Of a stretch of DNA of 64,000 nt, positions 4,732 to 5,179 are shown piece by piece. The notes under the pieces were generated by a model. That model was given only the letters and a program-made list of their open reading frames with translations. It was not told the origin of the DNA and did not search any database. Numbering within the stretch: the stretch's first letter is position 1; each line of letters starts with the position of its first letter. The position numbers and the translations under genes are program-made. The DNA lies in the NCBI GenBank assembly GCA_965235115.1, contig OZ249441.1:23126001-23190000 (forward strand), given 5' to 3'. Source of the stretch: Laetmonice hystrix (Eukaryota).

Positions 4732-5095
4732 CTCGCCCGCTCCTGCCCACGAATCTCAGGTCGTTGAATTTAGCCACTTGATTTTTCATGTACGCCACTG
4801 CATTCCTAAGTTCAGCACAACAGTTCTCATCGTTGCCGGCGTTGATAGCCACCTTAGTACCATCCTTGACTTCGCCGAGGGCCACCACTTTGAAGGCGAC
4901 TGGTAGCGTTTTGTTGGATCTCCAATGGGACGGCAGCACAGAGCACACGAAGTTAGGGCTCCCTGTGCGGACCAACTCCCCGGGGTGCTCGCTCAACACG
5001 GCGCTTAGAGTCCGTTCTCCTGTCATGATGTCCGACATGTTGCGAGGGGAGTCGGGGAACGGTGTCGAACCGTTCAGATCTGGAGTCAAATGCAT
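4732..5095 (-). CDS. Runx: Runx coding exon 1 (proximal P2-type N-terminus MHLTPD plus most of the Runt domain)
   Basis: Translation contains [38 protein letters not shown]...AGNDEN..AELRN...[20 protein letters not shown], an unmistakable Runt domain. It ends at a phase-1 donor GAG|GTGAGT (4731-4726). Confidence 0.97.
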
Positions 5096-5179
5096 GTGGT
5101 TAGCGGTATCTTGACACGTTTTGGTTGAATATTGGTAAAGTCGTGCGGTTTCGCGACCACGACAGCCACAGATGTGGTT
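5095..5179. promoter_or_regulatory. Three Runx consensus sites (TGYGGTT) in the Runx 5' leader
   Basis: TGTGGTT 5095-5101, TGCGGTT 5144-5150 and TGTGGTT 5173-5179, all in the same orientation. Confidence 0.6.

What the first reader, a model, noticed from the sequence alone, without database searches (positions are those of the whole stretch)
5079..5103. Hidden acceptor inside Runx exon 1 at the vertebrate P1 splice position: evidence for a distal first exon
Seen: the minus strand reads GCTAACCAC ATG CAT TTG ACT CCA G|AT CTG, a consensus branch point (CTAAC, 5103-5099) 20 nt upstream of CAG (5082-5080). Known: vertebrate RUNX distal (P1) transcripts splice into the P2 exon at ATG CGT ATC CCC GTA G|AT (MRIPV|D), five codons plus G, the identical position and phase, and RUNX2 P1 lies inside a long SUPT3H intron. 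Inference: this invertebrate Runx may have a P1/P2 dual-promoter architecture, usually described as a vertebrate feature, with the distal exon in or beyond the Supt3h intron.
Basis: partly seen in the sequence, partly recalled or inferred. Interest (0 to 1): 0.8.

Follow-up and report, generated by a model that had tools for sequence, protein, structure and literature searches.

The report
Hidden splice acceptor in Runx exon
The first coding exon of this invertebrate's single Runx gene has a conserved internal splice acceptor at the spot where vertebrate RUNX genes join their distal-promoter exon, and a likely distal exon lies 17.6 kb upstream inside a Supt3h intron, so the two-promoter Runx design probably predates vertebrates.

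Summary
The minus strand reads CGCTAAC-CAC-ATG CAT TTG ACT CCA G|AT CTG. This is Runx exon 1, behind a TATA promoter.

The motif alone is not unusual: CTAAC followed by AG occurs 68 times in the window. Its position is what is conserved.
- **AG conservation:** the A ending codon 5 plus the G of Asp6 is kept in 11 of 12 relatives' genomic exons. Residue 5 varies (P/L/T/A/V), and A at 4-fold sites is only 21%.
- **RNA from a close relative:** one RNA contig loses all homology exactly at that G and carries a different 5' exon (MPALVGI|DLNG).
- **RefSeq isoforms:** models in molluscs and a brachiopod join alternative N-termini at the same codon. The D, N or Y found there is what a phase-1 junction predicts. 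The Haliotis genome shows the matching donor, ATG ACA G|gtagga.

Comparison with the closest relative revealed a unique, conserved mini-exon at 22723-22702, ATG CGG CAT CAC CCA CTG CTT G|GTAAGT. It differs from the relative by two synonymous changes. It is in phase with 5079 and lies inside an 84.8-kb Supt3h intron.

This species' own RNA contigs stop at 5072, so no junction has been seen here. Amphioxus P1/P2 variants were published in 2008, so the design is not vertebrate-only. Verdict: interpretation supported, and this is a new member of a known kind.

The parts
5099..5105 (-). Branch-point-like heptamer CGCTAAC. Its branch A (5100) is 20 nt before the acceptor G. It overlaps the Runx site AACCACA, which runs into the ATG.
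   Evidence: It is the same heptamer as the experimentally mutated mouse Runx2 intron-1 branch site (PMC13152850). In relatives it reads CTAAC, CCAAC, TAAAC, AAAAC or CACTAAT, so it is only loosely conserved.
5080..5095 (-). Part specific to the proximal isoform: ATG plus four codons plus CCA G (MHLTP and the first base of Asp6). It would be intronic in distal-promoter transcripts. The acceptor AG is at 5081-5080.
   Evidence: NNA-G is conserved in 11 of 12 genomic orthologues against a background A frequency of 0.21.
4732..5079 (-). Shared part of Runx exon 1 (AT CTG AAC GG ... GRSGRG). The donor gt is at 4731-4730.
   Evidence: RNA contigs of run X4 cover 4735-5072, and the exon 2 contig continues into exon 3. 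The relative's transcript L004 aligns from 5080 downward.
5209..5215 (-). TATA box (TATAAAA) of the proximal, P2-like promoter. Three Runx consensus sites lie in the leader at 5095, 5144 and 5173.
   Evidence: The promoter block is almost identical in the closest relative. The Runx sites were counted.
734..849 (-). Runx exon 2, the C-terminal part of the Runt domain.
   Evidence: PF00853, 54 bits. An X4 RNA contig ends at 734 and carries 164 further letters that read ..KLRTDDRRIP.
22702..22723 (-). Candidate distal (P1-like) coding start, ATG CGG CAT CAC CCA CTG CTT G, encoding MRHHPLL plus the first base of a codon. Joined to 5079 it reads [15 protein letters not shown] in frame.
   Evidence: The closest relative has ATG CGG CAT CAT CCA CTG CTC G, differing by two changes that are both synonymous. 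It is single-copy in the genome. It is the only one of 17 chance ATG-to-phase-1 donor patterns that lies in a conserved block.
22696..22701 (-). Consensus 5' splice site GTAAGT of the candidate distal exon.
   Evidence: It is identical in the relative.
22724..22916 (-). Candidate distal 5'UTR or core promoter. Positions 22761-22916 are 80% identical to the relative, and a 15-mer ACCACTTCTAAGACG is invariant. It holds a conserved GATA motif (TGATAAG) and near-consensus Runx motifs (AACCGCG here, AACCACG in the relative). The TSS has not been mapped.
   Evidence: For comparison, 4-fold sites of exon 1 are only 47% identical between the two species.
5080..22701 (-). Predicted 17.6-kb P1 intron. 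It contains the proximal promoter, a divergent plus-strand promoter and exon, one Supt3h coding exon, a LINE and several conserved non-coding blocks.
   Evidence: Inferred from the two splice sites. No junction read is available.
9770..9939 (+). Supt3h coding exon ending ..AAWFTTEIQQM M|gtgagt, with the donor gt at 9940. The 5' limit is approximate. The next exon (HGFGDCRKPLPETATVIEEIV) lies 84.8 kb further on, beyond the window.
   Evidence: PF02269 matches at C6:23220736, translated. The Owenia neighbour gene carries PF02269 and the N-terminus ..TWFIAEIQQMM.
6299..6475 (+). Divergent plus-strand promoter with an NRF1-like GCATGCGC (6299-6306) and a YY1-like CCAAAATGGCTGCG (6324-6337). It drives a conserved 27-codon first exon, MNKSKQKSKK..ETK|gtaagg (6395-6475), about 1.1 kb from the Runx TATA box.
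   Evidence: The ORF and motifs are conserved in the closest relative.

Best explanation
This single-copy spiralian-type Runx gene most likely has two promoters, like vertebrate RUNX genes. The proximal TATA promoter (TATA at 5215-5209) starts transcripts that read straight through 5095-5080 and encode the MHLTP-D... isoform. Transcripts that start further upstream treat 5080 and everything above it as intron. They use the AG at 5081-5080, with a branch site in or near CGCTAAC, as the 3' splice site, so the shared exon begins at 5079 in the second position of codon 6. The best candidate for the upstream partner is a conserved exon that ends at 22702 (ATG CGG CAT CAC CCA CTG CTT G|GTAAGT). It lies on the Runx strand inside the 84.8-kb Supt3h intron. 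Splicing it in would replace MHLTP by MRHHPLL and regenerate Asp6. What is shown: the sequence, the conservation of the AG, use of this acceptor in relatives, and conservation, phase and uniqueness of the distal mini-exon. What is inferred: that the acceptor is used in this species (about 0.8), and that the 22.7-kb exon is its partner (about 0.6).
For: The sequence is as described. Codon 5 ends in A before the G of Asp6 in 11 of 12 genomic orthologues, although residue 5 is P, L, T, A or V. The background frequency of A at 4-fold sites in the same exons is 0.21. The naive binomial probability is 3.7e-7; by my own count of 8 lineages with 7 keeping the A it is about 1e-4. The RNA contig L004 from a close relative (91% aa identity) spans exons 1-2 and beyond. 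It aligns to the window and to seven other genomic loci starting exactly at its base 263, the G of GAT, and its 262-nt 5' part matches none of them. RefSeq isoforms in Haliotis, Gigantopelta, Patella, Crassostrea, Saccostrea, Pecten, Mercenaria and Lingula join different N-termini at this codon. The junction residue is D, N or Y, as a phase-1 junction predicts. In Haliotis cracherodii the genome shows ATG ACA G|gtagga 842 nt upstream of ATG CAT TTA CCC ACA G|AT, which matches isoform X3, MT|DLNG. The annotated Owenia CDS starts at Met20 although an in-frame MHPYL ATG with TTA G|AT is present. The distal candidate rests on collinear conserved blocks with the closest relative, an ATG, ORF and GTAAGT conserved with two synonymous changes, single-copy status, and location inside the Supt3h intron. 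For vertebrates, the proximal isoform has 5 specific residues (MRIPV) and the mouse Runx2 branch site is CGCTAAC (PMC13152850).
Against: No junction has been seen in this species. The only RNA-like run (X4) gives contigs at 4735-4931 and 4912-5072 and nothing over 5073-6000 or 6001-6295. It therefore shows neither the proximal leader nor a splice. One relative (L013) has GTC G and lacks the AG. CTAAC is not strictly conserved and overlaps a Runx site next to the ATG, so its conservation is ambiguous. L004's distal exon (MPALVGI) has no similarity to the MRHHPLL exon. ATG-to-phase-1 donor patterns occur about 17 times by chance in the upstream 59 kb. The distal N-terminus is not MASNS-like, and there are no consensus tandem Runx sites in the candidate 5'UTR.
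Confidence: 0.72

Rival explanations
1. The acceptor at 5081-5080 is real, but its partner in this species is some other upstream exon that has not been located. That exon may be non-coding, so translation would start at the conserved Met20 ([11 protein letters not shown]). The conserved mini-exon at 22.7 kb would then belong to another transcript, such as an lncRNA or an unannotated gene, or be part of an enhancer.
For: Isoforms starting at Met20 are annotated in Haliotis, Gigantopelta, Patella, scallops, Liolophura, Lingula and Owenia. Lingula, Mercenaria and Crassostrea each have several different upstream exons. L004's distal exon is unrelated to the 22.7-kb exon. In Haliotis the upstream exon sits only 0.84 kb away, next to YY1- and NRF1-like motifs, and the window has a similar motif pair at 6299-6337.
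Against: The Haliotis-like candidate near the divergent promoter (6136-6290, donor ctaag|gtagga) is absent from the X4 RNA contigs. It is also not conserved in the closest relative beyond 6290. The 22.7-kb exon has an ATG, an open frame, the right phase and a perfect donor, with only synonymous changes. That pattern fits a coding exon better than an enhancer.
Confidence: 0.17
2. The AG is an ordinary in-exon dinucleotide. This gene has a single promoter, the TATA promoter at 5215, and the resemblance to the vertebrate P1 splice position is a coincidence in this lineage.
For: CTAAC...AG is common (68 in the window). Given a conserved Asp6, only one base (the A) has to match. The species' own RNA contigs show no splice. 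One relative lacks the AG.
Against: 11 of 12 orthologues keep the A against a 21% background, while neighbouring synonymous sites vary. A close relative's transcript and many RefSeq models use exactly this site. The Haliotis genomic donor confirms the exon structure.
Confidence: 0.08
3. The NNA-G conservation reflects a different constraint on the first 16 nt of the ORF, such as translation-initiation context, mRNA structure or the overlapping Runx autoregulatory site, rather than splicing.
For: AACCAC immediately before the ATG is conserved in 10 of 12 species. It is a Runx consensus site.
Against: The Runx site ends at the ATG, 12 nt before the AG. Codons 3 and 4 vary freely at synonymous positions. 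This idea does not explain transcripts that join at this base.
Confidence: 0.03

Closest known systems
Vertebrate RUNX1/2/3 P1 (distal) and P2 (proximal) promoters, with P1 transcripts spliced into an acceptor inside the P2 first exon
   Same: The proximal isoform has 5 specific residues followed by Asp (MRIPV|D against MHLTP|D). The acceptor falls after the first base of codon 6. One relative reads ATG CAT ATA CCT GTA G|AT. A CGCTAAC heptamer lies upstream of the acceptor, as at the mouse Runx2 branch site. A long P1-P2 intron interlocks with SUPT3H on the opposite strand, as at RUNX2 (PMC4236176, PMC3974841).
   Different: The distal peptide is MRHHPLL (7 aa), not MASNS-like (19-32 aa). There are no consensus tandem Runx sites in the candidate P1 5'UTR. 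The proximal promoter has a TATA box and three Runx sites rather than the CpG island described for P2 (PMC533870). The intron is 17.6 kb rather than about 100 kb. Use in this species is unproven.
Amphioxus (Branchiostoma floridae) Runt exon-1 (P1) and exon-2 (P2) variants, Hecht et al. 2008 (PMC2265531)
   Same: It is an invertebrate with a single Runx gene, two promoter variants and Supt3h next door.
   Different: It is a chordate. This window belongs to the spiralian sequence group (nearest named proteins are Capitella, Owenia, Tubulanus and Lingula). The paper does not report the position of the amphioxus acceptor as far as I read it, and I did not check it.
RefSeq/Gnomon isoforms of mollusc and brachiopod Runx genes (for example Haliotis cracherodii X1/X3/X4, Crassostrea MNDDFIE|DLNG, Lingula X1-X5)
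   Same: The conserved exon is the same, the junction codon is the same, and both coding and non-coding (Met20-start) upstream exons occur.
   Different: These are database models, and I found no published description of them. In Haliotis the upstream exon is only 0.84 kb away. The upstream peptides are unrelated between lineages, except Crassostrea and Saccostrea.
Fugu FrRUNT, a compact gene with a predicted P1 and P2 separated by 1.4 kb (PMC533870)
   Same: It shows that the two-promoter layout can exist with a very short intron, as in Haliotis.
   Different: It is a vertebrate paralogue, and the layout was predicted from sequence only.

Membership tests
Runt-domain (RUNX) transcription factor gene | Runt DNA-binding domain (Pfam PF00853) | tested here: met
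   exon 1 scores 167 bits and exon 2 scores 54 bits, both over the cut-off. It is the only locus in the genome.
RUNX P1/P2 dual-promoter architecture | The proximal first exon has its own ATG and a 5-residue isoform-specific N-terminus followed by Asp. | tested here: met
   The window reads MHLTP|D. Vertebrates read MRIPV|D (P0127; PMC13152850).
RUNX P1/P2 dual-promoter architecture | A 3' splice site (AG) lies inside the proximal exon after codon 5 plus 1 nt and is conserved beyond what coding requires. | tested here: met
   The AG is at 5081-5080. It is conserved in 11 of 12 orthologues against a background of 0.21, p = 3.7e-7 naive.
RUNX P1/P2 dual-promoter architecture | Transcripts join an upstream exon to that internal site in this species. 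| tested here: inconclusive
   X4 RNA contigs end at 5072 and show no junction or loose end at 5079. Nothing is held for 6001-6295.
RUNX P1/P2 dual-promoter architecture | Transcripts join an upstream exon to that internal site in relatives. | tested here: met
   The L004 RNA contig does so. RefSeq isoforms in 8 or more genera do so. The Haliotis genomic donor is ATG ACA G|gtagga.
RUNX P1/P2 dual-promoter architecture | A distal first exon with its own ATG and donor is separated from the proximal exon by a long intron. | tested here: inconclusive
   The candidate is at 22723-22702 with GTAAGT. It is conserved with two synonymous changes, is in phase 1 and is single-copy. There is no RNA evidence.
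RUNX P1/P2 dual-promoter architecture | The distal N-terminus is MASNS-like. | tested here: not met
   The candidate encodes MRHHPLL. Relatives encode MPALVGI, MNDDFIE, MEEQ and MT.
RUNX P1/P2 dual-promoter architecture | Two tandem Runx-binding sites sit at the start of the P1 5'UTR (a gnathostome feature that lamprey lacks, PMC4236176). | tested here: not met
   There is no consensus site in 22690-22916. One lies at 22927, and there are only near-consensus AACCGCG / AACCACG motifs.
RUNX P1/P2 dual-promoter architecture | The gene interlocks head-to-head with Supt3h, as at the RUNX2 locus. | tested here: met
   A Supt3h exon ends at 9939 on the plus strand and the next exon is 84.8 kb further on. 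The candidate distal exon lies inside that intron. Owenia has the same neighbour.
RUNX P1/P2 dual-promoter architecture | The proximal promoter lies within a CpG island (PMC533870). | not tested
   CpG content was not computed. The proximal promoter has a conserved TATA box.

The most novel reading that the evidence does not exclude
The intra-exonic acceptor after codon 5 plus 1 nt of the Runx first coding exon, the alternative upstream promoter or promoters that feed it, and the interlocking with a Supt3h intron are homologous between spiralians and vertebrates. On this reading the P1/P2 design was already present in the last common ancestor of protostomes and deuterostomes. The upstream exons have turned over freely while the acceptor stayed fixed for more than 500 million years.
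Probability: 0.55. Interest if true: 0.7.

Novelty: new member of a known kind. Interest (0 to 1): 0.6.

Why it matters
RUNX P1 and P2 isoforms have distinct roles in blood and bone development. Published work traces the two-promoter layout to the vertebrate stem (lamprey paper) or to amphioxus.

If the internal acceptor and an upstream promoter are also functional in spiralians, the layout is a bilaterian heirloom. Promoter switching of Runx could then be studied in tractable invertebrates.

The result also matters for annotation. Gene models for this locus should include an isoform with a different N-terminus and a first exon 17.6 kb away on the opposite strand of a Supt3h intron. The many annelid and mollusc models that start at Met20 are explained by non-coding upstream exons that skip the MHL start codon.

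Tried and rejected
1. **RNA evidence in this species.** The look-up of sequencing runs found no run recorded as RNA. Run X4 turned out to be RNA-like, because its contigs cover only exons and a repeat. Those contigs stop at 5072, one unmatched letter short of 5073. They show no joint or loose end at 5079 and no proximal leader. This neither supports nor refutes the interpretation.

2. **A distal exon next to the divergent YY1/NRF1-type promoter.** By analogy with Haliotis I proposed minus strand about 6290 to 6136, donor ctaag|gtagga, with an in-frame TAA so it would be non-coding. X4 holds under a twentieth of the words of 6001-6295, and the stretch is not conserved in the closest relative. 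I dropped it as unsupported.

3. **A pattern hit ATG T|gtagga near 5666 behind a TATAAAT.** X4 has no contig in 5201-6000 and the site is not conserved. Dropped.

4. **The six-Runx-site cluster at 21509-21718 as the P1 promoter.** A TATAAAAG follows it, but the relative's equivalent interval has no Runx sites and no conserved donor was found. It is not the exon and may be a lineage-specific enhancer.

5. **Locating L004's 262-nt 5' exon.** I searched the window, the whole genome and all fetched loci and found no match.

6. **More P1-like transcripts of close relatives.** A protein search found none beyond P0002.

7. **Echinoderm isoforms.** They were uninformative.

8. **Wasted and empty look-ups.** One look-up of encoding contigs was wasted on a wrong minus-strand range, and one gave no DNA. 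The species behind SRR3401642 could not be identified.

Full report
**What is there.** The window is G000:C6:23126001-23190000. The genome has a single Runx gene, which lies on the minus strand.
- Exon 1 runs from ATG 5095-5093 to a gtgagt donor (gt at 4731-4730). It encodes [30 protein letters not shown]...GRSGRG.
- Exon 2 is at 849-734, and exon 3 lies beyond the window start.
- Upstream of the ATG are a TATA box (5215-5209) and three Runx consensus sites (5095, 5144, 5173). One of these overlaps the ATG.

**Is it more than chance?** As a bare motif it is not. CTAAC followed by an AG 13-45 nt later occurs 68 times on the two strands of the window. Given a conserved Asp6 (GAT), only the third base of codon 5 has to be A.

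The informative test is comparative. I collected the genomic first exon from 11 other animals of the same sequence group. Residue 5 varies among P, L, T, A and V, yet the codon ends in A in 11 of the 12 sequences:

| Codon 5 + G | Sequences |
|---|---|
| CCA G | window and four relatives |
| GCA G | one relative |
| TTA G | three relatives, including Owenia |
| GTA G | one relative |
| ACA G | Haliotis |
| GTC G (exception, no AG) | L013 |

- In the same exons, A occupies only 21% of 4-fold third positions, and only 4% in one species that still keeps CCA.
- The naive binomial probability is 3.7e-7. By my own count of 8 lineages, with 7 keeping the A, it is about 1e-4.
- Codons 3, 4 and 7 vary synonymously in the same alignment.
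- The AG dinucleotide is therefore under selection that the protein does not explain.
- The CTAAC is less clear. It reads CCAAC in the closest relative and other A-rich variants elsewhere, and it overlaps the conserved AACCAC(A) Runx site.

**Is the site used?** It is used in relatives.
- **L004 RNA contig.** Protein P0002 comes from a 1240-nt Logan contig of RNA run SRR3401642 (L004). Its ORF runs uninterrupted across the exon 1/2 boundary and beyond, so it is a transcript. It is 91% identical in protein to the window's exon. Its homology to the window starts exactly at 5080, the G of GAT, and the same holds for seven other species' genomic loci. Its first 262 nt match nothing in any of them, although all those genomes share AACCAC ATG CAT YTN there. 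It encodes MPALVGI|DLNG.
- **RefSeq isoforms.** Clusters show alternative N-termini joined at the same codon:
  - Haliotis MT|DLNG
  - Gigantopelta MEEQ|DLNG
  - Patella ..LTWQ|DLNG
  - Crassostrea MNDDFIE|DLNG and Saccostrea MNENFID|DLNG
  - Pecten ..SVRT|DLNG
  - Mercenaria ..MTF|DLNG, ..NEKP|DLNG and ..GYK|YLNG
  - Lingula ..HLWSR|DLNG and ..YNWT|NLNG

  Asn or Tyr in place of Asp is what a junction after the first base of the codon (X|AT) predicts.
- **Haliotis genome.** In Haliotis cracherodii the genome itself shows taa ATG ACA G|gtagga 842 nt upstream of ATG CAT TTA CCC ACA G|AT. This matches isoform X3.
- **Met20-start isoforms.** Many species also have isoforms starting at the conserved Met20. 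These need an upstream non-coding exon that skips the MHL ATG. The annotated Owenia CDS starts there although MHPYL and TTA G|AT are present in frame.

**This species' own RNA.** Run X4 is not recorded as RNA, but its contigs cover only Runx exons and a repeat, and one continues from exon 2 into exon 3. In exon 1 its contigs cover 4735-4931 and 4912-5072 at depth about 9-12, and then stop. Neither the proximal leader nor any junction is present. A second look-up showed that X4 holds essentially none of 6001-6295. Contigs drop thin coverage, so this is uninformative. The RNA tools were then exhausted.

**Where is the distal exon?** Only the closest relative (95% aa identity in exon 1, 47% identity at 4-fold sites) is near enough for footprinting. 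Walking 18.5 kb upstream in its contig (L005, L018) gave collinear conserved blocks:
- The proximal promoter.
- A divergent plus-strand promoter and exon (6299-6538).
- A Supt3h exon end (9891-9945).
- A non-coding element (19062-19412).
- A cluster of blocks at 21.3-24.0 kb.

In that cluster the minus strand reads ATG CGG CAT CAC CCA CTG CTT G|GTAAGT (22723-22696). The relative has ATG CGG CAT CAT CCA CTG CTC G|GTAAGT. The evidence for this as a distal exon is as follows.
- The two differences are both synonymous third positions, and the donor is a perfect consensus.
- The exon ends one base into a codon. Joining 22702 to 5079 restores GAT and gives [15 protein letters not shown] in frame.
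- It has seven codons plus one base, the same length as L004's and the oysters' distal ORFs.
- Upstream, 22761-22916 is 80% identical over 160 nt, higher than the roughly 74% that BLAST gives for the block containing exon 1 and the proximal promoter. It holds a conserved GATA motif and an invariant 15-mer.
- The block is single-copy in the genome.
- ATG-to-phase-1 donor patterns occur at 17 donor sites by chance in the upstream 59 kb, but this is the only one inside a conserved block.

**Relation to Supt3h.**
- On the plus strand an exon ends ..AAWFTTEIQQM M|gtgagt at 9939.
- The next Supt3h exon, HGFGDCRKPLPETATVIEEIV, is at C6:23220736, which is 84.8 kb further on.
- The candidate distal Runx exon therefore lies on the opposite strand inside this intron, the topology described for RUNX2/SUPT3H (PMC4236176, PMC3974841).
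- Owenia has the same neighbour, with a PF02269 hit.

**Comparison with what is known.**
The P2 isoform has five specific residues, MRIPV, and the mouse Runx2 intron-1 branch site that was mutated experimentally is CGCTAAC, the heptamer found here (PMC13152850).
- The lamprey paper infers P1/P2 back to the vertebrate ancestor.
- Hecht et al. 2008 already used probes for amphioxus P1 (exon 1) and P2 (exon 2) variants. The design is therefore not strictly a vertebrate feature.
- I found no paper describing it in spiralians, although RefSeq models contain it.
- Some features differ from the vertebrate pattern. The distal peptide is not MASNS-like. There are no consensus tandem Runx sites in the candidate P1 leader. 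The proximal promoter has a TATA box.

**Verdict.**
- I put about 0.8 on the acceptor being functional in this species and about 0.6 on the 22.7-kb exon being its partner.
- It is a new member of a known kind.
- The wider reading, bilaterian ancestry of the internal acceptor and the interlocked layout, is plausible at about 0.55 and would be of real interest to the field.

Noticed in passing
window 6299-6475 (+): A divergent promoter with an NRF1-like GCATGCGC and a YY1-like CCAAAATGGCTGCG drives a conserved 27-codon first exon, MNKSKQKSKK..ETK|gtaagg. It lies only about 1.1 kb from the Runx TATA box. The same motifs and ORF are present in the closest relative. Whether it is a 5' exon of Supt3h or a separate gene is open.
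   Followed up: partly
window 19062-19412: A conserved non-coding element is 67% identical over 374 nt to the relative, against 47% at 4-fold sites. It has invariant patches that look like TCF (TTCAAAG, twice) and homeodomain (TAATTG) motifs. It is probably a developmental enhancer inside the Supt3h intron.
   Followed up: partly
window 21509-21718: Six Runx consensus sites fall in about 210 bp, the densest cluster in the window (background 0.84 per kb). The equivalent interval of the closest relative has none, so the cluster is not conserved.
   Followed up: yes
window 23544-23626 and 23960-23989: Two further conserved blocks lie upstream of the candidate distal exon, with invariant GCTAATTATC and CATAATTACC (homeodomain-like) motifs. 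Between them is a CAG-type triplet repeat whose length differs between the species.
   Followed up: no
window 3067-3297: A very high-copy repeat sits in Runx intron 1. Summed contig word depth is about 20,000-38,000 in the DNA runs against about 40-50 for the flanks. It is also present at depth about 280 in the RNA-like run X4.
   Followed up: no
window 5036-5038 (Met20, minus strand): The second Met (..[14 protein letters not shown]) is conserved across annelid-, mollusc- and brachiopod-type Runx proteins. It is the annotated start of many isoforms (Owenia, Capitella, Lingula X5, Haliotis X4), so it probably serves as the start codon for transcripts with non-coding upstream exons.
   Followed up: partly
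run X4: A run with no library record behaves as RNA-seq of the same sample as the genome runs: it has 59 Mb of contigs that cover exons only. It could annotate this genome if laid elsewhere.
   Followed up: partly
L014 2117-2134: One invertebrate relative from a metagenome scaffold begins ATG CAT ATA CCT GTA GAT (MHIPVD). This is almost the vertebrate P2 start, MRIPVD, down to the GTA G|AT acceptor.
   Followed up: no
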